A DNA stretch of 64,000 bases, from NCBI GenBank assembly GCA_047495785.1, contig JBLDXI010000020.1:2046001-2110000 (forward strand), read 5' to 3'. Origin of the DNA: Lepidodermella squamata. Taxonomy: Eukaryota > Animalia > Gastrotricha. Made by a program: the position numbers and the translations under genes. Each line of letters opens with the position of its first letter. The first letter of the stretch is position 1. Under the pieces are notes generated by a model that was given only the letters and a program-made list of their open reading frames with translations, was not told where the DNA came from and did no database searches. Positions 23,331-57,218 of this stretch are shown one piece after another.

Positions 23331-24741
23331 TTGATTTATTAAGAAATAAATTCAGAAATTTTACTTTTTTTCATCTTCGAGAGAAATAAAGTGATGTAGT
23401 CTAGTTTTAATTTGGCCAAGTGATCAAAAATAGCCTATGGTGACATTTCTAGGTAATTTATTGTAACCTGCTATAATTAGTCAAATGTATGTTACCGAAA
23501 AAGCGATCATTTTCCCCAGTTATAGGAAATAGCCGATTAAATGCCAATACGATGATGCGCGCCATCAAATAATGAGGGTCTGTTGCGGAAACTTATTGCT
23601 AGTGACAGGTGTGCGCTGGACGCGCTCGAGCGTGGTTGATAATTCTTGACACACCGCACTAAAAATTCTGCACAACACAATAATCACCTGTTCGACCTGA
23701 TTCACGCTGACAGCAGCAGCATTGACGTTTTTTCACCTTCAACACACCCGCTCGTCAGTTCAACACTTGTCACTTGCAATTAGCTTAATTACGTATATAC
23801 CATAGTCCCTTTCAGTGTGAACATTTAACAGCTTGAAATTTCGAATATTCAACATTTTTTGTGGATTTTTCGCAATTTTTATTTACCGAGAAGTCTTTTT
23901 TAAAGTCTGTAACCCTCCAAGCTTCGTATTATTACATATTTAGGATCATAATATGGCTTCCCAGCATGATGAGGCTTTGTAATAATAAAATAACAATATT
24001 ATCTATAATAAACACATTTGCCCTCTCAAGCCGCGAATGAAGCGAAAAAAGCCCATCGTTATATAAGGAGTCAGGAACACGTTGTCTGTGTGATGAGCTT
24101 CATTTTCAATCAATCAATTTAATCACTCGAAATAATAATATATAGAAAAAATATCACGCAGGTGCACACGTATGAAATGAACTCTCATTTTTTAAACACT
24201 GTTTCCTTTCGACTACTCGATTTAAGCGCGTCGCGTCTGCTTCCTTTACTACTCGCAAAAATCCAGCTACGCTTTCGCCTCAGCTACTTAACGTATTGCG
24301 AGGTATCGAATTCGCAGACCGACTCTAACCACGACTTTTGCCTCAGCAGCACTCGATTCGCTTCGCAATCACGGGAATTTTTTTAAATAGTTATTTCCTT
24401 CGGATTTGCGCAGATTTTCCGCTTAAAAAAATGAACATTTTTCTTATAGATTTTTAATTGCGAATTTTTAAAAATTCAAATATGACCAGTTTTATTTTCA
24501 GGTTCCTTTTTGTCACATTCTAGGATTTTTTCATTCTGTGTGTCGTAATGCGTGCAAAATAATTACAGCGATTGTGTTCGCACATATGAATAATCACAGT
24601 CAAATCTGGCCTAATCCTTTAATTATATGTCACTTGATGGTGGATCTTTTACGACCGCCGTCGTCTCGATGAAATTCATTACAATTTTTTGCGCTGTCTC
24701 CGCATAGAGTTTTGATCGTATTTTTTAAACATTCTGGAATA

Positions 24742-27215
24742 ATGATCTACAACCAAGACATCATCGACTTCTATCGGCCCTCCAACGCCGTTTCTACATC
24801 ACTGCAGCAAGCGCCTGCAATCGTCCAAAGTTATGGCTCATCTTATCCCACCAGTGGAACTCTTTGTTTGGTTTGTTTACACGCCAAATTCTTGATTTTA
24901 ACGGTACTATTTTGTCCTAAAAGGTGTGTAATTCTCGAAAGCCTTGTCCGAGTGTTCGCAGCAAGCAGCCGACGATTTGCGAGGCCTGCAAGGTGATATA
25001 AAAAAAAATCTGATTAAACTCATCAACCTGTTATTTTTTTTATAGAAATTTTTCCTCCGACATCGCGATCTTAAAGTACAGCAAGGTTTGCAATGTGCAA
25101 CCGGGCGTGGCGATTGCGACGTCACGGTCACGGCCAAACGTCCGTGTTCTTCTTGCCGCCTAGCCAAGTGCTTCAACATCGGCATGCGGTTTGAAGGTTT
25201 TCTTATTGAATTCCAAATTTAGATGAAATAAAATCAACCATAATTTTAGACTACCCAATGCGGACAAAGGCGAGTAAGCGATCTCTGACGGGTAACGTCA
25301 TCTCGCCTTCCCAACTTCGCCAGCAGCAGATGCTTCAAATGCGAGCCGATCAGTCTTACGCCAATACGACACCTGGCGGGTTTTCGATGAGTAAACGAAA
25401 ATCTATTTCGAGCAACAGCGACTCATCACCGCCGAATGACGACCAATACGCAGGAAGCCCGGAAGGTTCTTCTGGCAAAAGTGATTCGCCCGAGCAGGCT
25501 GATTGCGAGTATGACGAAATTTTCGACTTGACGTCAACGGGCGCTGCTGGCCCGTCGTCAGGCAATGCCATGGCGATTGTTTCTATTCCGCAAGGCCTCG
25601 CGCTTACTGGCTTCTGTGAAGATTTGCTTCAAAAATCGTTAAGAGCCCTATCTGAACTATCTGCATTCGAAACAGTTCGTTTTTTAGCCCGCATAATTAG
25701 GGTTTCAGAACATATGCGTGTCTCAGACGGAGCCTTTTTTAGCTGGCGTTTTTCCAATAATTAGGCATTTCAAAATTCTAGACTGATGGCGGGATGAATC
25801 ATTTAAATTAAGTTAATGGGAATGGGAACTTCATCGATCCTTGGGACCTTTTATTTTTAATGCTAAAATCTTCGAATTTGCTAAATTTCGATTTTTCATT
25901 TCGCTAGCTACCTCTCCGGCGTCAGATCGATCGAATTCCCGATGAAAACACATGGTGGCAGTTGAAAATGGAACATTTCCAAGCCGCTGCCAGGAGCGCA
26001 ACGGCCTATGTTCGCCAACTTCCATGTTCGATCCGCCTTAAAAATTATTATTTCCTAAATAAAATTGTAATTTTTTCAGCCTTCACCACAATTCCGTTAG
26101 CTGATCGTCCTGTCCTATTCGCTAATGCTCTGTACCCGTTATTAATCGCCGATTTGGCGCTACCTTCTCAGCCACGTGGCCTATCGTTTCTCGGCATGAA
26201 TGAGCGAAATCGGGCCGAATTTTTGCGGCTTTTCTCCGAATTTCAGATGCTTTACGATGACACGAATCGAATCACCGAAGTTTTCGCGCAATGGTGCCCG
26301 ACCATGTTCGAATTCGCCATCCTTGCCGCTCTGCTATTTTACGAACGTAAGTCATCAAAATTTACATTTCTCGAATTCAAAGCACTTGAAATCGATCAAT
26401 TGAAGTGACAAAATTGTTAGTGAGGCTCTTTTGATCAAACATTCACCCTTTTAATGAAACGGGTCATCATCTACCCATTTCTTCCTAGACAGTTTGGACG
26501 GTTGTGTGAGAATCTAAATTCGGACATTTCGATTTTCACATGACATTTCACGTGATATTATAATTGAGATGAAAATTGATTGATCACTTAATATGAACAA
26601 ATTTTATCGTAAACAGCCTGTTTCCCCGGTCTGCAGTGCGCGGATATGGTCCGGCAGGTTCACGACCAGTTGAAATCCTTACTCCACGTCTACCTGCCGA
26701 AGCAGTGCTCGAACCCGAAACTGGTCAACTGGCGGCTGGAACAGTTCGAAATCGCCTTCAGCATGCTGCGACGCGCCTCGGTCGACCATTGTTTAGCCAT
26801 TGAAATGCTGGCTCGGCGGCGACCGGGTTTCGTGTCGATGAACGACTTGTTCTTCGAAGTTTTCACGCACACGCAACGCGCCATCAGCTTAATGTCCCAG
26901 CAGCGCCAGGACACCCAATCACCGTCGTCAACCGCGTCATCGTCCTCCTCCTCAGGCAGTCCGGGTCATGAAATTAGAGAGCGGCCCTTGGTTCTCGCCC
27001 CACTGCCTCCGCCTCAGCAGTACGCCCCGCAGAATTACCTAGCAACCGGCACGTCCGGGATTGTGTCGAATTTCGACTACAACAGTATTTCCGACAACGC
27101 CAACCCGGATAGTGACGAGACGTACTTGAGTTTTGAGCACGCTTTCAGCCACCCGCCGACTTCAACGAGTAGTGTAACGACGTCATCTTACTGGCAACCG
27201 GCCAGCTATACCTGA
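24742..27215 (+). CDS. Full-length nuclear receptor (atypical C4 DBD with CEACKK P-box plus LBD), ~585 aa
   Basis: Exons 24742-24870, 24924-24992, 25046-25196, 25250-25674, 25908-26025, 26080-26346, 26617-27215 join in frame. DBD CLVC-x16-CEACKKFFLR..CATGRGDC-x9-CSSCRLAKCFNIGM; LBD YVRQLPSFTTIPLADRPVLF, WCPTMFEFAILAALLFY, DLFFEVF. Confidence 0.9.
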
Positions 27216-27477
27216 CATTTCGTATCATCTTGTTTTATTGTGCAATATGGCGTGTCAATTCTGTATGTCCCTTTGTAAATGTCTCCAATTTTTACAACTT
27301 CTCGATAAATTTCGCACAATAAAAAATCATGAATGTATAAACGAAAACTCGGTCAATTTATTTTTTTCTTCTCGCAAAAAGTGTGTATAAAACAACGCGG
27401 TAATAAAGCGGAACAAAAAAGTTGAGCAAAATTATTGAAAAAGCCGGAAATTGACAATAAATGGTGGCGGTGATGAT

Positions 27478-30400
27478 TCACAGTTTGAGGCCGGCGCCTT
27501 TGCTTTTGTCCTCTCGGTAGCAAATCACGTAACGCTGAGCGACTGGAAATGGCGGCGACAGGTGATCCTGAAACATAAAAAATGGTGGGTTAAAAATTGC
27601 AGGTAAAAAAATGAAAATTGAAATTTTATTTAAATTCAAAATAAATTTTAAATTTTAAATTCAGATTTTTTCAATCATTTCTACTGATTTATCGAATCGA
27701 ATTTTTTTCAATCGATAATTAATTTCCACTTTTCAAGGGGACAAAAAATGTACCTCAAAATTTACCGATTAAATTAATTTTAATATTTGTGACTTTAATT
27801 ACCGGGTAGCAATCGTCTTCGAACAGGATTTGGTAAGGGTCGCGAACCCGTCGCGGGGGCCTATCGACGACGCCCTTGTAAAAGCACGTTGTCTGCGGGT
27901 ACAGAGCGAGAACGACCGTTCCAGGTGCGAATAACGAGTCCGCATGCGTCTTTGGATTGGCACGCCACAACGGCAACGGGATAACGCGACGACGGCTGAG
28001 CACGTGAATCCTTATAACACAGGATAATTCGCAAATTTAGAACAAAAACACGCTTCATAATAAAGAGAACTAAATTAGACTGAAATTGCATCGAAAAGTC
28101 AACGTCTGATATCCCTAAAACTATCAACTTTTTTAGGAATAGGAACAGATTAGAACAGAACCGAAAAGAACCGAAATAGGAACAGATTAGTCGAAAATCC
28201 AAGGTTAGAGAAACATAGAAAAATCTCGAAATTAATCGGGAAATTTTATTCGAAAGCTTTTTATGTTGAATATTTTTATCGAAAATTAAGATTTAAAGGT
28301 GGATGGGTGATTTTGATTTTCGAAATTCAGACTCCTGATTTTCCTTCAATTCTGAGAATTTTTACGTGGTGTTTGGCACAGCGCCGTTTCAACCCATGAA
28401 ATTCTTCTCATCCATTTTAAAGTTACCTGATTTTTCATTATGCTAAATTCCACCATCGAATTTTCACTCATTTTTTAATTCAGAGTCTTAAAGACATTTT
28501 TTTCAAAAAATATTTGATCTTAAAAAATCAGGGGTTCGAAATTTAAATTCCCACTGGATTTTTTCGGAGAATTTTCTGAGAAATTTACGATAAACGACTT
28601 TCCGATTAGCTTACTTTCGTTCTTTTGTTTTCTTCTTGACGCCTGACAACGGATTTTGTGTTTAAAAATTTGCTTTATCCAAAAATGAGATTTTTGGATG
28701 TTTAATCACGAAAAGCCTGAAGTCTGGATGATTTTTTAAAAATTAATAAAAAATCCAGCTTAATATAAAAAATTGAATAAAATGAGAAAACGAACTGTTT
28801 TCCATCCTCAGCATCGATATCCACAACTTCGTACTTGCTAGTCGCTTGGTTGAAGCACGAAACCTCAGCTAGAATCCAATTTTCATCCGCATCATCCGCA
28901 TCTTCACTGCGCACCTTCGCCGCGACCATATCGCCCGGCTTCGCTAGGTAGTAAGAATCAACCGATTCGGCTCCGCACAACGGCGGCGGTTCATCGTCCG
29001 GGTCGTTGATCGGCGGAATCCACACGGGAAGGTTTTCAGCCTGGCGCATGAGAAGAGCCATGAGGACACCGCGCCGAATCGGCGGCTGGCCTGTTCCGAG
29101 TGATAGCGAACCCAGGGTGTTGCTACCCGTCGGATTTTGAGGGGTGACGAGGCCTAGACCAGGCGGGGCTGATTCGCGCACGATTTGATTGCACAGGGCA
29201 ATGGCGGATTGGAGAGCCTGTGCTTCGTTTTTCGCCTCATTTAACGCATTAGACAGGAGACTCCTCAGACGAGATCTGGCATAACCTGAAGAAGCCGATG
29301 GCGAGCCTGCCCGGCCTTGACTGCAAAATTGTTGAACAATTTTAATTTCAATATTTTTCAAATTTTTGCATTCATTTTTTATGTTTGTTTTTTTCCAGTA
29401 AGCGCAAAACAGCGCGAACTTGATGCACGATTGAACGTGTGAAAAATTCGATTAAGATGTACAGTAATTGCAAGTTTTATTCAATTAGGGCGCTAATTGT
29501 GACAATTACTAATGGAATTAATAGAACGTCGCCATGCACGTCAATTAGGAATTTTTTTCACGCGTGGAAAATTAGATAAAAATCCCAACCAATAGCGAAA
29601 AGTCGAGCAATAAGAATTCCTGTTGAATTCGGAAAAATCACAACCTTAATTTATGAGCCTGAAAATACGCCTTATTTCGCTGGGTTTATTCGTTTAGCTT
29701 CCTCGAACCCTCAGGTGTGTGGCAAATTTGCCATGTTCGCTCCGAAGACCAATAAATCACTGATTGGCAAAATCGATATCGGTATTTCAGTTCGAAATAA
29801 ACCTCGTAAATTGACCTCAAATATCGAGAAATACGAAAAAATATGTGATAATAAAAAAGACGTCCAACTTGAAAAATCTTATTTAGGAAAGTGTTGGAGC
29901 CTCAAAATCAAGAATCGAACGAAAATCGAAAGCTACAACCCATTAAGCAATCGACACGCGGCTTCATTGCAAACAAAACTTATTTTTTTTGGTATTTACG
30001 CATCGTTGCAACAATTTCTCTGAAATTTTACTATACTGGAACTTTTCCAACATGCCGATTTTGATGAGTCCAAATGTGCCAGGGTCGAACGGCTGATAAC
30101 TGCTACGGAACTCCAAATCAAGGAACAAGTCACCACGGAAGTTGTCAAGCTCAAGTTTGAAGTCGAGTAACTCCAAGCGATTCATCTCAAACAATCCTCG
30201 AGATTTACAAGGATCTTGGATTGATTGTTGATGAAAAATCATCTTTTAAAGGCCAGGGTTATGAAGCCATCAAAGAGGCGTACCTCAGGGCTAATTTTAT
30301 TGTACGCGCCCTCAAAGGGCAATTAGCTGAAACCTTTTGCCACTGTTTGCCCTCTTCTTGAGTATTATTCTAGCATTTGGTCTTCATTTTTGAAAAAAAC

Positions 30401-47651: not shown

Positions 47652-50600
47652 TCACTGGCGTTTCGATGACGGCGTGTCGAGCGAGTCGGCCACCGTAAAA
47701 CTCGACGATTGCGGGTTGCTGCCGTGCACCTGCTGCTGCCGTTTTCGAGCTTCGATCGTCGACGGCGATAACTCGCGCAGGCCACGTCGCGAAACTCGAA
47801 CTGGCGTTAGCGTGTTGTTGTTGTTGTTCATTGAAGCGTTGTGTTCGATGACGGTCGACACGGTTGACAACTGCTCGGTGGATGAGGCTGGGTTTTGTTC
47901 TACAGGCGGCAGCATGACGTGCGGCGTTCGACGAGCCGATATTAACGTGGCTTCACTCGCTAAAGTATTAAACAAAAATAAAAAAATTAGTCGAATAAAT
48001 TTGAAGTCCAAAAAATAACTGAATCATCAGGTAAATTAACTGAAGGAGAACACCTAGGTATTTAATGGATCTTACGTTTAGCGGACCCATAGGTGCCTGT
48101 TTGGGGACCAATGTTGCCTGTAAGAGCAGAACGATATGTTTCACAGTTGAAATATTAAAAAGTTTGCCACCGCTTAGCTTCAATTAAAATTTTACTACTC
48201 ATTCTTCGAAGCTTAGATTTTGCTCAGGATATAACACGAATTAAATATAACAGAATATCGCCAAATTTTTAGCCGTTAGAGTTTACAAATGTTTGCTTTT
48301 CTAAGCATTTCTACGAATTGAAGTTGGACTGAAATGACCCGAAATTTTACAGATCTCGGGAAAGCCACGCTGTAAGACTAAAAAGCGGCCTCCTTCGTTT
48401 GGATATTGTACCGAATGTTAAGCCTATACAGAATCGTTTCACCTAAATTTTCCATTATTTTTTTTTATTTTTGGTTATTTTTGATTAATTGGAATTCAAG
48501 TCAGACATTCAAGTGACATTTTTGGATTTTGAAGAATTTCGCACGTCGACTTCAACCTTACCTCAAGAAATTTTCTCAAAATTGGGGTTTTAAGAAAATA
48601 AGGATTATTTTACACCAGCTGGGGGTCGCTGGGGTCGCTTGATGATTTTCCTAGAACTTAATTTTGTTCATTTTTGGTCAAATTTCCGGAAAGAATATTC
48701 AAAAATAGCGTTATTATTCGACTGAAAATGCGGTTAAGAGCCAAATTCGTGAAAATATTGAAGACATTCCAGGAAAAACGGTTGTTAATTTGGTGATATT
48801 TTTATAGCTTGGACGCAAAATCTCGGAATTTTGAGCATCTTTTCCGACAGTGAAAAAGAAAAACGAACATTCTTCTAGGGGTAGCAGCCTGGGAAGAATA
48901 TTAGATTTTGGGGTCGACAAGGGTTAGGTGTTAAGAAGCCCTGTTTTGCACCTTCAACAGAGTTTTAGAGAGTAAAAATCGATTTATAATAGGTATCAAT
49001 TTTACAGATCAGCATTACAGCTTCGAGAACCAATATTTAAAAATATTCTAAATATTTAAAAAATTTGTCGAATTCGCATTCGAATTCGTCGGAAATGTTC
49101 TTGGTCTTGCATGGCAATTTCAAGTAATAAATCAGGTAAAATGGGTGACACATAGAGAACATTTTGAAAATTACCTCTGAAAAATGAATTCTTCGAAGTC
49201 GGAGAATCAGCTTGAGCTGCCGAGCCCAGGAAACCGCCGCCACTCGAGCTGTCATGCATCGCTGAACCCGCAGTGCCACCTTTCGGTCCAGCCTTACTAT
49301 TCACATTCTCTTCATTACTCGCCTGGGTGATATTCAACGCAGGCGGCTGTTTCTGCTGCAAACTAGCCGCGGCAACAATACGATTCCTCAAATCATTCGT
49401 CGCCTTTTTCGCAACTTGCAAGTCCCGATTGATTTCCTTACTCAACCTCTGCGCCCGTTCATCGACGCTAACCCGCGTCGAGTTGATATTCGACTCTTGA
49501 AGAGCAGTTTCCAGCGTCCTAACAACTCGATCCTTCTCATGCAGCTGCGTTTCCAACTGCGCGATTTGCAGCTTATTCCGCGACTGGGCGTCGCGTAACT
49601 CGACAATTCGATCGAACAAATGGGCCAATAACTGCCGCGCGTCATCGCCGCTAAGCACCTTCAACTGGTCGTGAACCATAGCCGTGCTCTGCCGAACAGC
49701 TTCAGCCGGCATTTTCGCCTCAACCTCCCCTAAAGCCTCCTGTCGATACTCAAGCGCTTGATCTACAGCATCAATAGCCTCCTCCAACTCGGCTAATCTC
49801 CGCTCTTCAGGCATAGATAGGACGAAACCCGAGGCGAGTCGATCGGCTAGAACCTTCCGTTGAGCGTCCAAATGAGCCCGGCCGGCTTGAAGGGCCGTTT
49901 CATCCGGGATCTGCGATAACTCCTGAGTCAAAGCCTGGGAACTCCTCATTTTTCTCAGGATCAATTTCTCACGCTCGGAGACCATCGCCTCTCGTTTCGC
50001 GAGCAACTCCTGCTGACCGGCTAGTTGCTGCTCCAACTGCCGCAGTTGCTCCCGGGCCGCTGTGACCTTTTCAACCTCATTCTCCAGCCATTGGCGATGG
50101 GTATCAACATCGTCACTGGTCGAATTAGATGGCCGGTTAGATTTTCGCCTAGCACTCACCAATTGATCGGCCCGTTGTCGTAGCATTCGCTCCTGTTGTT
50201 GGGATCTTTCCTCTAATTGACGAATTTTAACCTGATCCTTCTCAACCTCGCGCTCTAATTTCGTCTTTGTGTCCATTTCTTCTTTCAACCGCTTTTGTAG
50301 ATTCGCTTGTTGTTGCTTCAAATTACCGAGCGCGACCTTTAAATCGTCCAATTTAGCAGCGGAGTTTGCCTTCTCGCTCGCCTCGGCTTGCTTCTTTTTA
50401 AGGAGGGACATTTTCTTACGCGCCGCTTCTAATTTCTGCTCGTTATTCTCCGACCGGTCTTGCTCCATTTTCTCGACAACAGCCTGCATTTCGCGTAGTT
50501 CAGCCGCGGTTTGCTCCTTCTCGCGATGCAGCGCTCGGATGATTTCAGCCTGTTCCTGCGCCACTCGGTCCGTCTCGCGGCCTGATCGAACTAGTTGAGC

Positions 50601-53309
50601 GATCAATTGCTCCTTCAACCGAATTTGCGCCTGCAAATCGCCCAGCTGGTCGCTCAACTTGCTCGCCCGATCGCGACTTTCAGCCAGGGCGAGCGCGGCT
50701 TTTGTCGAATTTTGCGTCTTATTCTGCAGGGCTGGGGAGGCGGTCTGGCCTGCTGCGATTTTAGCAGCGATTTTTCGACCCTCCGTCACTTTGTAAGTAC
50801 CCCGGCGACCTTCCTTTAAATTTCCAGCTTTCTCCGCTGGTTCTTCATCGTCGCTTATCGACGGCCCGCTTTCCGCCGATTTTACCAGGACTGAGTCTGA
50901 ATCTTCGAGCCGGGATTGCAGCAGGGCGGACCGGGCTCGAAATGACTGCATAACTTTATCGGCTGAAACAAATGCCGGGCTCGTGTGGACGTGGCGAGAA
51001 ATCGGCCGAGATGCGTTGATTCGCTCCTGAACCGGCACAGATCTCGGTCTTTGGCTCGAGACCGGTAGGATATTCGTCGGACGAAACCGCTGGTAATTGC
51101 CGGTATCACTTCGGGTTTCGGCCTGATTTTCGTCGATTGCCTGGAACATGAGACTAGCTCCGACGTCGATTGATCGAGAAACAAGATTGGCTCGAGCGTT
51201 AAGAGCTTGTTGTTGTTTGGCTCGAAGTTCTGAGACTTCTAGCTCTTTAGAAACCAACATTTGCTGCAAACGCGCAATTTCGCTCGAAAATTTATTAACT
51301 TCCCCTGCCAATTTTTCACGATCTCGCATCTATAATAAATAAATAAATAAAAATTAATTAATTTGAAAAAATTAATTATCCAATTAATTAAAAATTAATA
51401 AAAAAAATAACGTTATTTAGTTAAATAAAATAAAATAAATAATGACTCATTCTTAATTTTAAAATTAAATTTACCGCATCTTCCGCCGTTTTCTCAAGCG
51501 ACCGAATTTGCTTAGCCCGATCCGCGAAAATTTCCTCGTCGCTTTTCAGCTCTTCCTTAGCCCGTTTCAGCTCATCCTCAAGTTTTTTGATAGTTTCACT
51601 GAATATTTCGTCGATATGCTCGGTTGGTAGGGTTGAGTTGCGTAGTTGATCAATAATTCCCAGCCAAGATTTGAACCTCGAATTTTGAGATGTTGACAGA
51701 AGTTGCGCCTGGTCCAGGGCGATCAGTTGCCGGTAAGCTTCCTCAGAAGCAACTCGATACTGAGCACACATAGCGTGTAAACTGCCGATTTTATCTTCCA
51801 GCTCTCTTAGCCGGTTCGATTGGTCATCTGATGAAGAAACAACGTCCTGCCCAACGGCGGCTAGATTAGCCATGACTGTTCTCTGGCGGTTTAGCTCGTC
51901 ACGCAGCGTCATGATTTCGCTTTTCATTGCTTCGAATTTTTTCGTTTGAGCATCTTGGTTTATCACAGGTTTGTTTTTGATATTACGGGCTCGGCTAGCG
52001 TAGTTGAGAGAGTTCAAACTTTCGTCCATGTCTGAATCAGCCGGGCCAATGCAGCAAATCATTAGCGTTTTAGCGTTACCGCCGAGTGAATCTTTCAAGA
52101 GACGAGTAATTTTCGAGTCACGGTAAGGGACATGGGTCGATCTACGACGCGGGTCTGACAAAGCACTGATCACGTTTCCCAACGCCAGAAGTCCGGAATT
52201 TATGTGAACAGATTCTGAACAGAAAATGTAGATTTTTTCTCGAGCTGATTAGTCAAATCTTACCTTTGAATCGGTCGCCAACGTTTTTGGTTCTAGCTGC
52301 GCGCTCACTGCCCGCCAAGTCGACAAAATGAAATTTCGAGCGAATAATGTGATGCATTGTGTTATCTTTTGATATTAAAATTACAGTAAGGAAATGAGCC
52401 ACGAATTGTACTCAGCACTTACTTTGTTGTCCCTCGACAGCATCGACTATGTCATGCTTAACATCCAATTCGCTCATCCAAGTTTGCTCTGATAATTAAC
52501 GAATAAGTGATACAGTTTAGGCAATGATATGAATGTATACCTAGAGTAACTGTGAAAACGGAATGGGATCGACTTGATTGATCATTCATTCCAGTTGCAC
52601 CAGTGTGACGCACCGCTGAGCCTCGGCGCAAACAGGCTATTACTTCAGCTTCATTTGTACACACAACCTCTTCAACTCCGAACAGAACTGTGTTTCCTGC
52701 ATCATCTTCGCGTATGTGAAGGTCTTTGCAGCTAGTGTCTGGTCGAAGCAGATCATGAAGCTCTTCTTTGTATATCTCAATGTAAGACACCCGAATAGAG
52801 TAGACCTTTCCGGCTTTGTGCTAAAAATATTGATTCTAAGATTATGCATCTTCAATGACTGAAGAAATTACCCTCAGTTGATGAAAGAAAGCGGAGATAG
52901 CTCTAGGAACGACACCGAAATGATCATCTTCGTCCGGGTCAAGGACATGGCCTGTCACGGTGTGAGTTTTACCAGATCCCTTTAATTAACAAGGTTAAAC
53001 GTGAAAGACATGAGTAATCGTAAAATTACGCACCGTTTGACCATACGCAAAGACTGTTGCGTTATAGCCTTCCAGAAATCCGTTGACGAGCGGAGTAACA
53101 CAAGCCTCGTATACTTCCACTTGAGTAGACCGGGGCGCAAAAACATAGTCGAAGGAAAAAGTTTTGTCGCGACCAATGATAAGTTGGTTTGTAGCTAAAA
53201 CTAATCTAACACAACTTCGCTCATTTCCAACCTTTTCTCGTTCAACTAGAGGACGAACACGCACAGCGACTTTAACAGCAGTTTCTTCTTCATTCTTGCC
53301 GTTCAGCAT
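47652..53309 (-). CDS. KIF27: Kinesin-4 family KIF27/KIF7-like protein
   Basis: AVKVAVRVRPL, IIGRDKTFSFDYVF, YNATVFAYGQT|GSGKT, SSRSHSVF, FHFVDLAGSE, HVPYRDSKITRLLKDSLGG, long coiled coils, C-terminal VRVSRRGLRELS. Confidence 0.88.
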
Positions 53310-54083: not shown

Positions 54084-57000
54084 TTAAGCAGGGATAGTAT
54101 TATACTTGTTAATTTTTTCTACTTCTCGTAACCAGGATAAGAGTGATAACATTTCCGGTTCTTTATCTAGATCAGTGTAGAAGAATATTTTTTCGAAATA
54201 ATTATAGGCATTGCTAGGGATATTTGCACGTTTATTTTTAGTCGACATGTTGGCCGAATCGCAGGACGACAGGTAGTGTACCAGCATGTGCCAACTGTCC
54301 AAAGCTGGGTTCACCGGCGAATTGCAACGTAAGCATTTGCCAGATGAAATATATATCATAGGTTTGAAGGTAGAGTTACACCTGATCCGCAATAATGTGT
54401 TAACGAGCGGGCGGGGTAGGAGGCGGCTGTAGTCGACCAGAATCGATGGTTTTTTAACCAGTGAGACGTCGTATGGGGAGCAAGAAATGTGGAGGGCCAT
54501 GCGTTCATGACATTCAGCTCTCGATAATTCAAATAAGGCACGCTTGACTAGGTCAATCTTGATGTGCACTGGGCAACCCGCTTCGAGCAACCAACTGAGG
54601 TTCAACTTTTCCAGCTCGCGCCGTCCTTTGATGAGAAGATTACGGGTGGGTTGAGAAAGCTGTCGGAGGTTAAGCATGGCATGGTGAAGTAGAGTATTTT
54701 CAGCGGACGATTGCATCTTGAACAACATACGTAGTGCGGCAATGACTCTGGCCTGGGCTGGCGAGACCAATTTGAATTCGGTGTCGATCAGGTCATGGCT
54801 GGTAGAGATGGGAAGATTAAATGCTTTTTTAATGAATCGCGAATGACTGGGCGGCGAGGATGAAGGAGTGAACAAACCCCATATTTCAGCACCGTGCGTG
54901 TAGGTGGATAGAACGCAGGTGTTATATAATTCACGAATATTTTCCGGTGACATATCGTTGAAATGATGAAAAAGAGTGGGAACTATACCAATAGCACGCT
55001 GGATTTTCATGGCCGCGTGTTTGATGGCGCCGCTGTAAAGTAGCCTGTCCGATACGATGATACCCAGGTAAGTGAAATCTCGAACAACTTCGAGTTGTGC
55101 ACCTTCGTATGAGACTTCAGTGTTGATGGGATCAAAGCTTTTATGAAAAACCATGACTTTAGTCTTCTTAACATTTACCGTCAGCTCATTCGCCGCCGAA
55201 TAACAGCTCAGTTTGTACAGGTACTTTTGAAGTTCGATAGCTCGATAGGCAAAAAACACAAGGTCATCGGCGTACAAGATAACCCGGATAGTGAGAAGAC
55301 CAAGCGGAAGACCTTTGCACTGTAGTTTAGCGAACTCGTCGACGATATCGTCGATAAATAGCGTGAACAAGAGAGGCGAGAGCGGATCTCCCTGTTTGAC
55401 GCCGCGATTAAGGGGAAAAGAATCGGTTACATCACCATTGACCAAGATCGACGCTCGGCAGTTAGAGTACATATTGGCAATTATTCGAACGAAGCCCTCA
55501 GGAATACCACGCTGGCGAAGTTTTTTCAGCAGTAACTGATGATTGATCGTGTCAAACGCGCTAGTGTAGTCGACGAAACAGGCGTAGACAGGGACGCCAC
55601 GCTCTACCTCTGGAGCTAAACCGCAATGAAGAACTGTAGCGCCATCGTTAGTGGATAAACCGGATTGGAAACCAAATTGCTCAACGTTCAGAGGGCGGCC
55701 CGCTTTGGAATCGGGATGAAGCCACGCACGGAGCCTGGAGTCTAGGATTTTAGAGAAGAGCTTTGCGACGCACGGCTGCAAAGAGATAGGACGGTAGTTG
55801 CCGACGTTGTTAGCATCCCCCTTTTTGAACACAGGAGTGATCAAGGAAGTCTTCCACTCCTCTGGGTATGTCCCTTCAGAGATTATTTTCGAATAGAGCA
55901 CTGAGAGGTAAGGAGCCATTAGGGTGATTTCGTCATTTATGTTTGAAAATTTCACACCATCGAGACCAGCGGCAGATGAGAGGTTACAGTCCTTCAGATT
56001 CTCAATTATCTCTTCTTGCGTTACAGGCGAGAGCAGAATGGCGATACCGATTACCGAGTCATTCCCATCAGCAGGAGTTTCGACATCGCGATTATTAAAA
56101 GCAAGTTGGGAGGCAAAAATATTTTTGAAATGAGCGAAAAATTCAGCTGGCGACGGAGTGATCACATTTAGTTTATCTTTCTTTTTCAGACGCCAGACAG
56201 AGTTCGGGGATTTTACAATCGAGTCAAAAGTTGACTTATCTTTGTTGCAGAGGTCGGTCGGGCGGGTTTTCGGCTGGCCATGTTGGCTAGAGCGGATCAC
56301 TGCGGCTTCCCTGGCAATACTTGATAACAATGCCGCCATTTCATTCGCGTGCAGCTTGTCGCAGTGGCTTGACGAGATTGGCAGATTCTTTCTCAAAACA
56401 TAATTGAACTTGGTTTTGTCGAGTTTCGGGCGCTTCTGTGACAGTTCAGGGCGTTTTATTGACGCTACTATCCACGTGTGGTCTGAGCGGACACCAGAGT
56501 GGTTGGGGGGAGCAAAGTCCCCCACTTCGAAATGGGAGACTAGTCGCAACAGAGACACGTTCGAGAATGCGTAGTCAATGACTGAGCCATTTTGGTGAGC
56601 AGCTGACCAGTGGGTACATTTGCCGGCTAAATCAGGTGCAACCCTGCCGTTGAGGATTATAAGATTGGAATAGTTAATAAATGACATAAATGCATCGAGA
56701 TCACTAGACGTATTGGCTGTTTCCTGAGACTTGCGAGTGCCCAATTGTAACGGGGAAATCAGTTCAGGGGGTACTTCTAGCTGTTCACCAATGCGCTTGT
56801 TCATGTCCCCCAAAACCAACAGACGAAATTCAGACTGGTATTTACAAGACATTGTCAATATATCATCAGTAAGTTTTTCGAAAAGATTATCTAGCCCAGG
56901 TGGGATATAGACAAAGCAGACAACAAAACGGACTGGGTCAGTTATTTCCACAAATATCCAGTTTTGAGTTTTGAGCAAGACAGACGATTTGAACAGATTG

Positions 57001-57218
57001 CTAGAGTATAGAACGAAGCCCCCAGACAGGCCAGAGGTATCGGTATTGAGCTTAGCAGGTACAGTCACATTAGAAAAGTTGTCAATTGTAGGGGGTGACC
57101 ACGAATCATCCTTGCGAGTTTCAGTTACAACAAAGAAATGACATATTGAGCTTAGATAGCTAATAAAAGGTGATTTAATAGTTGAATATCCATTTAGGTT
57201 CCAGTAGCCACACAACAC
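54084..57218 (-). CDS. LINE ORF2: AP-endonuclease, reverse transcriptase and C-terminal Cys/His motif
   Basis: WNLNG, ET, GDMN, SVIDY, SDH (APE); NYRPISL, QFGF, GVKQGDPLSP, YADD, YLGI (RT); CLRC..H...C. Track start is GTG, not ATG. Confidence 0.95.
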   Translation of the reverse strand: MLCGYWNLNGYSTIKSPFISYLSSICHFFVVTETRKDDSWSPPTIDNFSNVTVPAKLNTDTSGLSGGFVLYSSNLFKSSVLLKTQNWIFVEITDPVRFVVCFVYIPPGLDNLFEKLTDDILTMSCKYQSEFRLLVLGDMNKRIGEQLEVPPELISPLQLGTRKSQETANTSSDLDAFMSFINYSNLIILNGRVAPDLAGKCTHWSAAHQNGSVIDYAFSNVSLLRLVSHFEVGDFAPPNHSGVRSDHTWIVASIKRPELSQKRPKLDKTKFNYVLRKNLPISSSHCDKLHANEMAALLSSIAREAAVIRSSQHGQPKTRPTDLCNKDKSTFDSIVKSPNSVWRLKKKDKLNVITPSPAEFFAHFKNIFASQLAFNNRDVETPADGNDSVIGIAILLSPVTQEEIIENLKDCNLSSAAGLDGVKFSNINDEITLMAPYLSVLYSKIISEGTYPEEWKTSLITPVFKKGDANNVGNYRPISLQPCVAKLFSKILDSRLRAWLHPDSKAGRPLNVEQFGFQSGLSTNDGATVLHCGLAPEVERGVPVYACFVDYTSAFDTINHQLLLKKLRQRGIPEGFVRIIANMYSNCRASILVNGDVTDSFPLNRGVKQGDPLSPLLFTLFIDDIVDEFAKLQCKGLPLGLLTIRVILYADDLVFFAYRAIELQKYLYKLSCYSAANELTVNVKKTKVMVFHKSFDPINTEVSYEGAQLEVVRDFTYLGIIVSDRLLYSGAIKHAAMKIQRAIGIVPTLFHHFNDMSPENIRELYNTCVLSTYTHGAEIWGLFTPSSSPPSHSRFIKKAFNLPISTSHDLIDTEFKLVSPAQARVIAALRMLFKMQSSAENTLLHHAMLNLRQLSQPTRNLLIKGRRELEKLNLSWLLEAGCPVHIKIDLVKRALFELSRAECHERMALHISCSPYDVSLVKKPSILVDYSRLLPRPLVNTLLRIRCNSTFKPMIYISSGKCLRCNSPVNPALDSWHMLVHYLSSCDSANMSTKNKRANIPSNAYNYFEKIFFYTDLDKEPEMLSLLSWLREVEKINKYNTIPA

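What the first reader, a model, noticed from the sequence alone, without database searches (positions are those of the whole stretch)
24862..25196. Single atypical DBD with the CEACKK P-box associated with two-DBD nuclear receptors
Seen: spliced DBD CLVCNSRKPCPSVRSKQPTICEACKKFFLRHRDLKVQQGLQCATGRGDCDVTVTAKRPCSSCRLAKCFNIGM. Spacing is x16/x17/x6 instead of the canonical x13/x15/x5, HYG is lost, the first loop has an extra Cys, and no second DBD follows. From recall, CEACKK is the P-box of the first DBD of 2DBD-NRs described in Schistosoma and other invertebrates. Inference: the locus may record a 2-DBD to 1-DBD to 0-DBD reduction series, with altered DNA specificity.
Basis: partly seen in the sequence, partly recalled or inferred. 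Interest (0 to 1): 0.72.

Follow-up and report, generated by a model that had tools for sequence, protein, structure and literature searches.

The report
One-DBD offshoot of two-DBD receptors
This is an intact, expressed hormone-receptor-type gene whose single DNA-binding domain carries the DNA-reading helix so far reported only from the first domain of the rare two-domain receptors, and whose ligand-binding domain groups among those receptors, so it most likely descends from one that lost a DNA-binding domain.

Summary
A 7-exon, 585-aa nuclear receptor gene lies at 24742-27215 (+). It has one DBD with spacing x16/x17/x6, no HYG, an extra Cys in loop 1 and P-box CEACKK. An LBD with an AF-2 motif follows.

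- **Expression and constraint:** RNA-like contigs show five of the six introns. In a close relative, 21 of 22 listed coding differences are synonymous.
- **Single DBD:** no second DBD or relic of one is detectable.
- **A family, not a one-off:** at least 13 single-DBD paralogs share its hallmarks: KK-ending P-box, KFFLRNR, x6 D-box and the intron after the P-box.
- **DBD origin:** the N-terminal half scores as first-DBD (D1) type. Both introns in that half sit where they do in D1 of a true two-DBD receptor of this genome (L022).
- **DBD tree:** family plus D1s split from all second DBDs and ordinary receptors (99/90). A split survives removal of the P-box columns (98/100).
- **LBD tree:** the LBD core nests inside the two-DBD clade, sister to L022. 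The AU test rejects placing it outside (p 0.03).

Caveats: the zinc-finger-II half cannot be assigned to D1 or D2. A family-with-D2 tree is not rejected (p 0.08). DNA specificity is untested.

The scan had already noted two-DBD arrays elsewhere in this genome and the DBD-less array beside this gene.

The parts
24742..27215 (+). Whole coding region of the receptor gene ('NRw'): 7 exons, 585 aa, laid out as A/B, DBD, hinge, LBD, F tail
   Evidence: Open frame across all junctions with a single terminal stop. Five introns are seen as GT..AG joints in RNA-like contigs.
24742..24870 (+). Exon 1: 41-aa A/B region plus the first Cys of zinc finger I (ends ...LCL)
   Evidence: X1 shows a joint to exon 2.
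24871..24923 (+). Intron 1 (53 nt, phase 0), which splits Cys-x | x-Cys of the first Cys pair
   Evidence: RNA joint. The same position and phase occur in D1 of the 2DBD gene L022 (LCM|VCNRK versus LCL|VCNSRK).
24924..24992 (+). Exon 2: zinc finger I with a 16-residue loop, an extra Cys, and CEACK of the P-box
   Evidence: The family zinc-finger-I HMM scores it at 29 bits. No difference from relative X2 is listed in this exon.
24993..25045 (+). Intron 2 (53 nt, phase 0), directly after the P-box CEACK. It is inferred and was not seen in RNA.
   Evidence: GT..AG ends and a stop if read through. The same intron is found in 10 paralogs and in D1 of L022, L023a and L027.
24978..25048 (+). P-box CEACKK (aa 62-67), interrupted by intron 2
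   Evidence: The literature gives this P-box for D1 of 2DBD-NRA only.
25046..25196 (+). Exon 3: rest of the recognition helix (KFFLRHR), a 17-residue spacer, zinc finger II and GMRFE
   Evidence: Pfam zf-C4 at 31 bits. All three listed differences in relative X2 are synonymous. The syntenic ortholog is 58% identical and keeps every Cys.
25094..25117 (+). D-box with six residues between the Cys (CATGRGDC) instead of five
   Evidence: It is shared as C-x-TG-x3-C by most of the single-DBD paralogs compared and by the ortholog.
25250..25674 (+). Exon 4: Ser-rich hinge holding only two Cys and no second DBD. The conserved FDLTST motif is at 25522-25539 and LBD helix 1 begins near 25612.
   Evidence: Introns 3 (25197-25249) and 4 (25675-25907) are seen as RNA joints.
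25908..26346 (+). Exons 5 (25908-26025) and 6 (26080-26346): the LBD core, helices about 1-6, including LPSF...DR..LFANALYPLLIA
   Evidence: RNA joints for introns 5 and 6. The profile and tree place this core among 2DBD-NR LBDs.
26617..27215 (+). Exon 7: the C-terminal half of the LBD, then an S/P/Q-rich F tail of about 110 aa ending near SSYWQP (27183-27200) and the stop codon
   Evidence: A search of 1.8 billion representatives found one relative, the ortholog fragment P0001.
26847..26864 (+). AF-2-type motif LFFEVF (aa 464-469)
   Evidence: It is conserved as LFHEVF in the ortholog.

Best explanation
NRw is a functional, expressed nuclear receptor. It descends from the two-DBD receptor subfamily (2DBD-NR, NR7) but has only one DBD.

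**What the DBD is.** Its first zinc finger, its DNA-reading helix (P-box CEACKK followed by KFFLRHR) and both introns in that half are those of the first DBD (D1) of two-DBD receptors. The second DBD (D2) is gone without trace. The loss happened before a family of at least 13 single-DBD genes radiated in this genome. The DBD-less genes next to NRw are further reduced members of the same family.

**How it most likely works (inferred, not shown).**
- It acts like an ordinary one-DBD receptor.
- One zinc module reads a half-site through the EACKK helix. By the P-box rule for Glu/Lys-type boxes, the half-site is probably AGGTCA-like.
- The LBD, with its AF-2 helix, recruits co-regulators and provides dimerisation, as shown for the LBD of Schistosoma 2DBD-alpha.
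- The lengthened loops (x16, x17, x6) and the loss of HYG should change backbone contacts and the DBD dimer interface rather than the fold.
For: **Gene and constraint**
- The 585-aa frame is intact.
- X1 contigs are spliced and have zero depth in the introns.
- 21 of 22 listed coding differences from a close relative are synonymous, and all indels lie in introns.
- A syntenic ortholog on metagenome contigs keeps zinc finger II, the x6 D-box, the LBD and AF-2.

**One DBD only:**

**D1 nature of the N-terminal half**
- D1 HMMs score it at 28.6 and 27.7 bits, against 11.4, 11.4 and 15.2 bits for D2 and other receptors. All 13 family members score highest with the external-D1 model (D1 of L001 plus D1s from other species).
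- Mytilus D1 likewise has a Cys in place of HYG, and KKFFMR.
- The introns at Cys-x|x-Cys and after the P-box K match D1 of L022. The D2s examined have no intron after their P-box.

**Trees**
- DBD tree: {13 D1 + 13 family} split from {13 D2 + 17 other NRs} at 99/90.
- With the 11 P-box/helix columns removed, {12 family + 9 D1} still holds at 98/100.
- Placing NRw with D2 and the others is rejected, p 0.002.
- LBD-core tree: the family (98/98) is sister to 2DBD gene L022 (90/85), inside this genome's 2DBD clade (97/92). NR1-type outgroups lie apart.
- A 2DBD clade that excludes the family is rejected, p 0.026.

**Profile searches**
- A family-only LBD profile picks 2DBD LBDs, both own and from Mytilus and Mesocestoides. 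About 95 other NR references do not appear among its 45 best non-family matches.
- Genome-wide, it matches L022 and L001 but none of the seven canonical NR loci I checked.

**Literature:** CEACKK is reported only for D1.
Against: - The zinc-finger-II half carries no D1 signal. It scores best with generic NR models, its single best match is the D2 of L026, and its tree is unresolved.
- Whole-domain D1 versus D2 HMM scores are mixed across the family.
- A family-plus-D2 clade is not rejected (p 0.08), nor is D1 as a clade excluding the family (p 0.28).
- The alignments are short (68 and 91 columns), and long branches meet in the DBD trees.
- The reference set lacks NR2A/B/F, NR3 (including ERR), NR4, NR5 and NR6 LBDs.
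- Intron 2 has no direct RNA support.
- Zinc finger I of the ortholog was not recoverable.
- Zinc binding, DNA binding and dimerisation are all untested.
Confidence: 0.68

Rival explanations
1. The single DBD is a D1/D2 chimera. An in-frame deletion inside a two-DBD ancestor fused D1's zinc finger I and recognition helix to D2's zinc finger II, removing the D1 finger II, the linker and the D2 finger I in one step.
For: - The N-terminal half is clearly D1-type. The C-terminal half is not.
- For the C-terminal half, the top five non-family matches across the family are 26 D2, 33 other receptors and only 6 D1.
- NRw's best C-half match is the D2 of L026, which has the same six-residue C-x-TG-x3-C D-box.
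- A family-plus-D2 tree is not rejected (p 0.08).
- The family ends in GM like D2 and ordinary DBDs, unlike most D1s of this genome.
Against: - The tree of the C-terminal half is an unresolved polytomy.
- External D1 and D2 models score NRw's C-half equally, at 23.1 versus 22.2 bits.
- The D1 second fingers of this genome's 2DBD genes are so diverged (at most 5.6 bits) that retained ancestral features in the family explain the pattern equally well.
- External D1s (Mesocestoides, Mytilus) also have CR..KC, and in Mesocestoides GM.
- No D2-type C-terminal extension (GRH..R) follows the DBD.
Confidence: 0.15
2. This is P-box convergence. NRw and its family expanded from an ordinary one-DBD receptor (for example an NR1 or NR2 type, or ERR with EACKA) and acquired CEACKK independently.
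For: - P-boxes vary within the family (CEACKK, CDACKK, CDSCKK, CSACKK, CETCKK and others), so this helix evolves quickly.
- Zinc finger II looks generic.
- An intron after the P-box also occurs in other receptor subfamilies (my own knowledge, not tested here).
Against: - The D1 grouping survives removal of the P-box and helix columns (98/100).
- The LBD nests within the 2DBD clade, and a position outside it is rejected (p 0.026-0.029).
- A family-only profile finds 2DBD LBDs and none of about 95 other receptors among its 45 best non-family matches.
- The unusual Cys-x|x-Cys intron is shared with L022 D1.
- Exon 6 finds no solved LBD in the PDB, which holds many ERR, NR1 and NR2 LBDs.
Confidence: 0.07
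3. The family is an old one-DBD lineage that never had D2. It would be sister to, or the donor of, D1 of the two-DBD receptors.
For: D1 as a clade excluding the family is not rejected on the DBD (p 0.28). The trees are unrooted.
Against: - The LBD is nested inside this genome's own 2DBD radiation, closer to L022 and L001 than the flatworm and mollusc 2DBD-NRs are (97/92).
- All 2DBD LBDs as one clade excluding the family is rejected (p 0.026).
- The two 2DBD-NR papers describe no such one-DBD CEACKK receptor in other animals.
Confidence: 0.05
4. NRw is a decaying or non-functional copy whose odd spacing reflects relaxed constraint.
For: The loop lengths are atypical, HYG is lost, and Pfam Hormone_recep does not hit the individual LBD exons.
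Against: - The frame is intact, the transcripts are spliced, and substitutions are 21 synonymous to 1 non-synonymous.
- The ortholog keeps every zinc-finger-II Cys, the D-box length, AF-2 and a C-terminal motif.
Confidence: 0.03

Closest known systems
2DBD-NRA (NR7A) receptors of flatworms, molluscs and rotifers, e.g. the Schistosoma mansoni 2DBD-NRs, Mesocestoides corti (P0006) and Mytilus (P0008)
   Same: - P-box CEACKK followed by KFF-x-R, as in their first DBD.
- Cys in place of the HYG Tyr/Gly region in the mollusc D1.
- The LBD core groups with theirs.
   Different: - Only one DBD. There is no CEGCKG/FFRR second DBD and no short inter-DBD linker.
- Loops are lengthened (x16/x17/x6).
- The LBD is very diverged, with no Pfam or PDB hit per exon.
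L022 (G000:C2:2591500-2594000), a true two-DBD receptor of the same genome
   Same: - Sister to the family in the LBD tree (90/85).
- Its D1 has the same two introns and the same start (LCM|VCNRK versus LCL|VCNSRK).
- Extra Cys-Pro in loop 1, and a K-F-[FY]-x-R-N-R helix.
   Different: L022 keeps D2 (CEGCKG, GFYRR) in the same 598-aa open frame. Its D1 P-box is CGACKK, and its D1 finger II is far more diverged.
Single-DBD paralogs of this genome (loci L002-L011 on C20, C21, C30 and C54)
   Same: - KK-ending P-box (exact CEACKK in 5 of the 14 sequences read, NRw included) and KFFLRNR.
- D-box C-x-TG-x3-C and CRLAKC..GMR.
- The intron after the P-box, and the LBD core.
   Different: - Most have a 13-14-residue loop 1 with RCG where HYG would be. 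NRw has a 16-residue loop with the Cys elsewhere.
- Identity is at most 57% in the DBD and 40% in the LBD core. NRw has no close paralog.
Estrogen-related receptors (NR3B), P-box EACKA
   Same: The P-box differs by one residue. The paper itself notes the similarity.
   Different: - ERR DBDs rank low among the solved-structure matches of exon 3 (E about 5e-3).
- The LBD exon finds no solved ERR LBD.
- No ERR sequence was in my trees.
DBD-less receptors (vertebrate NR0B: DAX-1, SHP)
   Same: The neighbouring genes of the array are LBD-only members of NRw's family. The locus therefore pairs a DNA-binding receptor with possible non-DNA-binding partners.
   Different: There is no sequence relationship to NR0B. 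NRw itself has a DBD. Any partnership is untested.

Membership tests
Nuclear receptor superfamily | zf-C4 DNA-binding domain with two Cys4 zinc modules | tested here: met
   Exon 3 hits PF00105 at 31 bits against a cut-off of 21.1. All eight ligand Cys plus the ninth are present. The spacing is non-canonical.
Nuclear receptor superfamily | Ligand-binding domain (PF00104 fold) with an AF-2 helix | tested here: inconclusive
   - No Pfam hit for any single LBD exon, and no PDB hit for exon 6.
- A profile of the LBD core matches the LBDs of PF00104-bearing 2DBD-NRs P0007-P0009 at 18-26 bits (family-only profile) and 78-85 bits (iterated profile).
- An LFFEVF motif sits at the expected place.
- The joined LBD was not scanned or folded.
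2DBD-NR (NR7) by architecture | Two tandem DBDs before one LBD | tested here: not met
   Only one DBD, and no relic of a second on either strand of 24000-27400 or anywhere in the window.
2DBD-NR (NR7) by architecture | Second DBD with P-box CEGCKG followed by FFRR | tested here: not met
   Absent.
2DBD-NR (NR7) by descent | First-DBD P-box CEACKK | tested here: met
   aa 62-67. The literature gives this as the D1 hallmark.
2DBD-NR (NR7) by descent | DBD groups with D1 rather than with D2 or other receptors | tested here: met
   - Split at 99/90, and 98/100 without the P-box columns.
- NRw with D2 and the others is rejected, p 0.002.
- The signal lies in the N-terminal half only. Family-plus-D2 is not rejected (p 0.08).
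2DBD-NR (NR7) by descent | LBD groups with 2DBD-NR LBDs | tested here: met
   Nested in the 2DBD clade, and exclusion from it is rejected at p 0.026. Profile evidence agrees. The outgroups were limited to NR1-type receptors.
Nematode supplementary receptors (HNF4-derived expansion) | Nematode host, with DBD and LBD affinity to HNF4-derived NHRs | tested here: not met
   - No SL1 spliced-leader sequence in the 121-Mb genome.
- The nematode NR references do not appear among the 45 best non-family matches of the family LBD profile.
- The genome has a canonical CEACKK/CEGCKG 2DBD-NRA.
ERR (NR3B) | P-box EACKA with an ERR-type DBD and LBD | tested here: inconclusive
   The P-box differs at its last residue. 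ERR DBDs are weak PDB matches, and exon 6 finds no ERR LBD. No ERR sequence was included in the trees.

The most novel reading that the evidence does not exclude
The single DBD is a natural D1/D2 chimera made by one in-frame deletion between the two DBDs of an ancestral two-DBD receptor. It puts the D1 recognition helix on a D2 second finger. The resulting one-DBD receptors, together with the DBD-less paralogs beside them, form a lineage-specific network of DNA-binding and non-binding partners.
Probability: 0.12. Interest if true: 0.75.

Novelty: new variant of a known kind. Interest (0 to 1): 0.6.

Why it matters
The 2007 paper on two-DBD receptors calls CEACKK unique to their first DBD, and the 2023 review lists four receptor architectures: DBD plus LBD, DBD only, LBD only, and two DBDs plus LBD. 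Neither describes a one-DBD derivative that keeps the D1 helix.

This gene and its family show that the rare two-DBD architecture can be undone. D1 can then persist as the sole DNA-binding module under purifying selection.

That offers a natural experiment for a question open since 2006: what the first DBD binds on its own, and why two DBDs are needed. In one genome one can compare D1 alone (NRw), D1 plus D2 (L022, L001) and no DBD (the neighbours).

Tried and rejected
**Organism identity was not established.**
The rotifer sequence is unverified, so its absence means little.
- An intronless HSP70 found nothing above 83% identity, and no named species above 78%.
- The protein atlas gave no useful taxon.
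- The canonical 2DBD-NR of this genome is 48% identical to a cestode protein and 43% to a mussel protein.

**Relatives of NRw**
- Exon 7 against 1.8 billion representatives gave only the ortholog fragment P0001. The other three hits were low-complexity matches.
- Two scans of JGI metagenome contigs found no further ortholog.
- A look-up of the ortholog's hinge ORF found no contig reaching zinc finger I.

**Analyses that did not discriminate**
- Solved structures: exon 3 matches many receptor DBDs without a clear preference, and exon 6 matches none.
- Whole-domain D1 versus D2 HMM scoring is mixed.
- The tree of the zinc-finger-II half is unresolved.
- The AU test after dropping the P-box columns did not finish in time.

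**A lead considered and dropped.** I considered FDLTST in the hinge as a relic of the FDFTK(I/V)PC motif before D2. It more likely matches a D-F-[IL]-D-[IV]-[TD] hinge motif that lies after D2 in L023a and L026.

The joined 585-aa protein and the joined DBD were not sent to Pfam, PDB, database, structure or complex tools. Those searches were done exon by exon, by reference. Exons were joined only inside local scripts, for codon effects, coordinates and the NRw row of the alignments and trees.

No complex prediction was run.
Full report
**1. The gene**

Reading 24300-28800 and translating in three frames gives a + strand gene of seven exons: 24742-24870, 24924-24992, 25046-25196, 25250-25674, 25908-26025, 26080-26346 and 26617-27215. 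Joined, they form one frame of 585 codons with a single terminal stop, and every intron is GT..AG.

Contigs of run X1 lie only on the exons, with depth zero in intron bins and upstream of the gene. They carry GT..AG joints for introns 1, 3, 4, 5 and 6, so X1 behaves as RNA and the gene is transcribed and spliced.

Intron 2 (24993-25045) was not seen as a joint. One X1 contig folds back on itself there, which looks like an assembly artefact. The intron rests on four points:
- its splice signals;
- its 53-nt length, the same as introns 1 and 3;
- a stop codon if it is read through;
- the same intron in ten paralogs.

Run X2 is DNA of a close relative. All its listed indels fall in introns, and 21 of its 22 listed coding substitutions are synonymous, including all three in the zinc-finger-II exon. 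Eight further differences were not listed by the tool.

**2. The observation**

The DBD spans aa 42-116 (nt 24865-25195). It reads Cys-x2-Cys, 16 residues, CEAC, 17 residues, Cys-x6-Cys, 9 residues, Cys-x2-Cys-x4-Cys. It has a tenth Cys in loop 1 and no HYG.

- Exon 3 alone passes the Pfam zf-C4 threshold, at 31 bits against 21.1.
- No second DBD exists. D1, D2 and general DBD models find nothing else above 7 bits on either strand of 24000-27400.
- Family-specific models find nothing else above 9 bits in the whole window.
- Downstream come a Ser-rich hinge, an LBD whose core reads LPSF..., DR..LFANALYPLLIA, and an LFFEVF AF-2-type motif, then an S/P/Q-rich tail.

**3. The genome context**

The genome is 121 Mb, with at least 150 scored zf-C4 matches out of 438 candidates. 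It is an animal with roughly 53-nt introns that I could not name.
- It has no nematode SL1.
- Its proteins have no close named relative. HSP70 reaches at most 78% identity to a named species.

The genome holds a canonical two-DBD receptor at C17 (L001), with CEACKK in D1 and CEGCKG-FFRR in D2 in one open frame. L001's best named matches are cestode (48%) and mussel (43%) 2DBD-NRs. It also holds many diverged two-DBD genes: L022, L023, L024, L027, L028 and L029. Earlier notes of this scan had reported such arrays.

**4. NRw belongs to a family of one-DBD receptors**

Its zinc-finger-II exon and LBD exon 6 find paralogs on C20, C21, C30 and C54. In the ten loci I fetched, the single-DBD genes share these features:
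- a P-box ending in KK (exact CEACKK in 5 of the 14 sequences read, NRw included);
- KFFLRNR after the P-box;
- RCG where HYG would be;
- a six-residue D-box of the form C-x-TG-x3-C;
- CRLAKC..GMR;
- a phase-0 intron right after the P-box Lys.

None has a second DBD between its DBD and its LBD. The seven LBD-only genes upstream in the window belong to the same LBD family.

A genome-wide profile search shows the family is larger still. It finds eight tandem LBD cores on C6 and three on C30.

**5. Which DBD is it?**

[quoted passage not shown] All five searchable papers with the string are in that context.

External D1s read CEACKKFFMR[HSN], and the mussel D1 has Tyr-Cys-Gly in place of HYG. The extra loop Cys and the KKFF-x-R helix are therefore D1 traits.

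Splitting the domain after KFF-x-R gives two different answers.

*N-terminal half.* In all 13 family members it scores highest with the external-D1 model (D1 of L001 plus D1s from other species). For NRw the scores are 28.6 bits (external D1) and 27.7 bits (own D1), against 11.4, 11.4 and 15.2 bits for D2 and other receptors.

Both introns of this half are shared with D1 of the true two-DBD gene L022.
- The unusual one inside the first Cys pair reads LCM|VCNRK in L022 and LCL|VCNSRK in NRw.
- The other follows the P-box Lys.
- D2s of this genome have no intron after their P-box.

*Whole-domain ML tree (68 columns).*
- It splits {13 D1 + 13 family} from {13 D2 + 17 other receptors} at 99/90.
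- After removing the 11 P-box and helix columns, NRw still sits in a 98/100 set of 12 family members plus 9 D1s. The grouping is therefore not just the P-box.
- AU tests reject NRw with D2 and the others (p 0.002). They do not reject the whole family with D2 (p 0.08), or D1 as a clade by itself (p 0.28).

*C-terminal half (zinc finger II).* It carries no D1 signal.
- It scores best with generic receptor models.
- Its best single match is the D2 of L026, which has the same six-residue D-box.
- Its tree is a polytomy.

So the recognition half is D1. The origin of finger II is open: either retained ancestral D1 features or a D1/D2 fusion.

**6. The LBD**

Exon 6 alone finds, outside the family, only the two-DBD genes L022 and L001 among my loci and references.

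A profile built only from NRw, the DBD-less neighbours and four one-DBD paralogs ranks hits as follows:
- L022 at 49.5 bits;
- L001 at 44.3 bits;
- the mussel and cestode 2DBD-NRs at 18-26 bits;
- none of about 95 other references (E78, E75, NR1D, NR2C1, RAR-like, HR3, EcR/LXR-like and nematode receptors) appears among its 45 best non-family matches, which end at about 8 bits.

Genome-wide, the same profile matches L022 and L001 but none of the seven canonical receptor loci I checked.

The ML tree of the core (91 columns) shows:
- the family as a 98/98 clade;
- sister to L022 (90/85);
- inside this genome's two-DBD clade (97/92);
- then the cestode and mussel 2DBD-NRs;
- NR1-type outgroups apart (99/97).

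Forcing all two-DBD LBDs into a clade that excludes the family is rejected (p 0.026).

The outgroups were NR1-type only, and the alignment is short. This is good evidence, not final.

**7. Conservation elsewhere**

Exon 7 has one relative among 1.8 billion representative proteins. That relative lies on metagenome contigs (L012, L013) whose downstream genes are collinear with the window at about 80% identity, so it is an ortholog.

The ortholog keeps several features:
- KFFIRHRD;
- every finger-II Cys and the six-residue D-box;
- the LBD core, at 56-79% identity;
- AF-2;
- a hinge motif, FDLTST;
- a C-terminal SSYW-x-P motif.

Its finger I lies beyond the contig ends.

**8. Reading**

*Shown:*
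- an intact, spliced, constrained one-DBD receptor;
- a D1-type recognition half;
- an LBD nested among two-DBD receptors;
- membership of a one-DBD and no-DBD family.

*Inferred:*
- the ancestor had two DBDs and lost one before the family radiated;
- the protein binds an AGGTCA-like half-site through the EACKK helix, by the classical P-box rule;
- it dimerises and recruits co-regulators through its LBD, as shown for the LBD of Schistosoma 2DBD-alpha.

- the two-DBD stage is not at this locus;
- the order of DBD loss within the family is unresolved;
- altered specificity is untested.

**9. Novelty**

The two 2DBD-NR papers describe no one-DBD receptor with the D1 helix, and the other papers holding the string were not read for this. 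This is a new variant of a known kind. It is worth a specialist's attention because it isolates D1 in nature.

Noticed in passing
L012:122-1752 and L013:71-757 (ENA metagenome contigs): Syntenic ortholog of NRw from an uncultured relative. Its exons 3 and 4 are fused, with no intron after the DBD. The downstream diphthamide-synthase and ZT_dimer genes are collinear with window 27.8-36 kb at about 80% identity.
   Followed up: partly
window 25522-25539; L012 about 500-560: The hinge motif FDLTST is conserved between NRw and its ortholog, while the surrounding hinge is only 26% identical. Similar D-F-[IL]-D-[IV]-[TD] motifs sit in the hinge after D2 of two-DBD genes L023a and L026.
   Followed up: partly
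window 27183-27200; P0001 C-terminus: The C-terminal motif SSYW-[QE]-P is conserved between NRw and the ortholog, at the end of an otherwise low-complexity tail. NRw has no terminal LxxLL like that reported for its DBD-less neighbours.
   Followed up: no
G000:C6:418091-438050 and G000:C30:670644-674078: Eight and three tandem matches to the family's LBD core (49-81 bits). No zf-C4 hit at these places appears in the lists I saw, so they may be further DBD-less arrays.
   Followed up: no
L026 (G000:C17:2899500-2902000): A D2-type DBD (CEGCKG, GFYRR) with a six-residue D-box CLTGQNDC, like that of the one-DBD family. It is the best single match of NRw's zinc finger II. I did not establish whether it has a D1.
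   Followed up: partly
L028 (G000:C54:2580000-2589999): In the tandem two-DBD genes, D1 has a 25-residue loop 1 and P-box CEACRK, and it lacks the sixth Cys (C-E-H...). D2 is split by an intron inside loop 1, a position different from the D1 introns.
   Followed up: partly
window 54084-57218 (-) and 49056-51329 (-): A 1044-aa open frame with a reverse-transcriptase domain (RVT_1, 109 bits), which is a retroelement. Also a 757-aa exon of a KIF21/KIF7-like kinesin.
   Followed up: no
G000 contig pairs C25/C26, C15/C105, C28/C33, C26/C49, C31/C48: Many zf-C4 hits occur as pairs with identical scores on two contigs. This suggests uncollapsed haplotypes or very recent segmental duplications, so receptor counts for this genome are inflated.
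   Followed up: no
window 24961/25118, run X1: One RNA-like contig joins exon 2 to exon 3 on opposite strands (a fold-back). I take it for an assembly artefact. It is the reason the exon 2/3 junction has no direct support.
   Followed up: no
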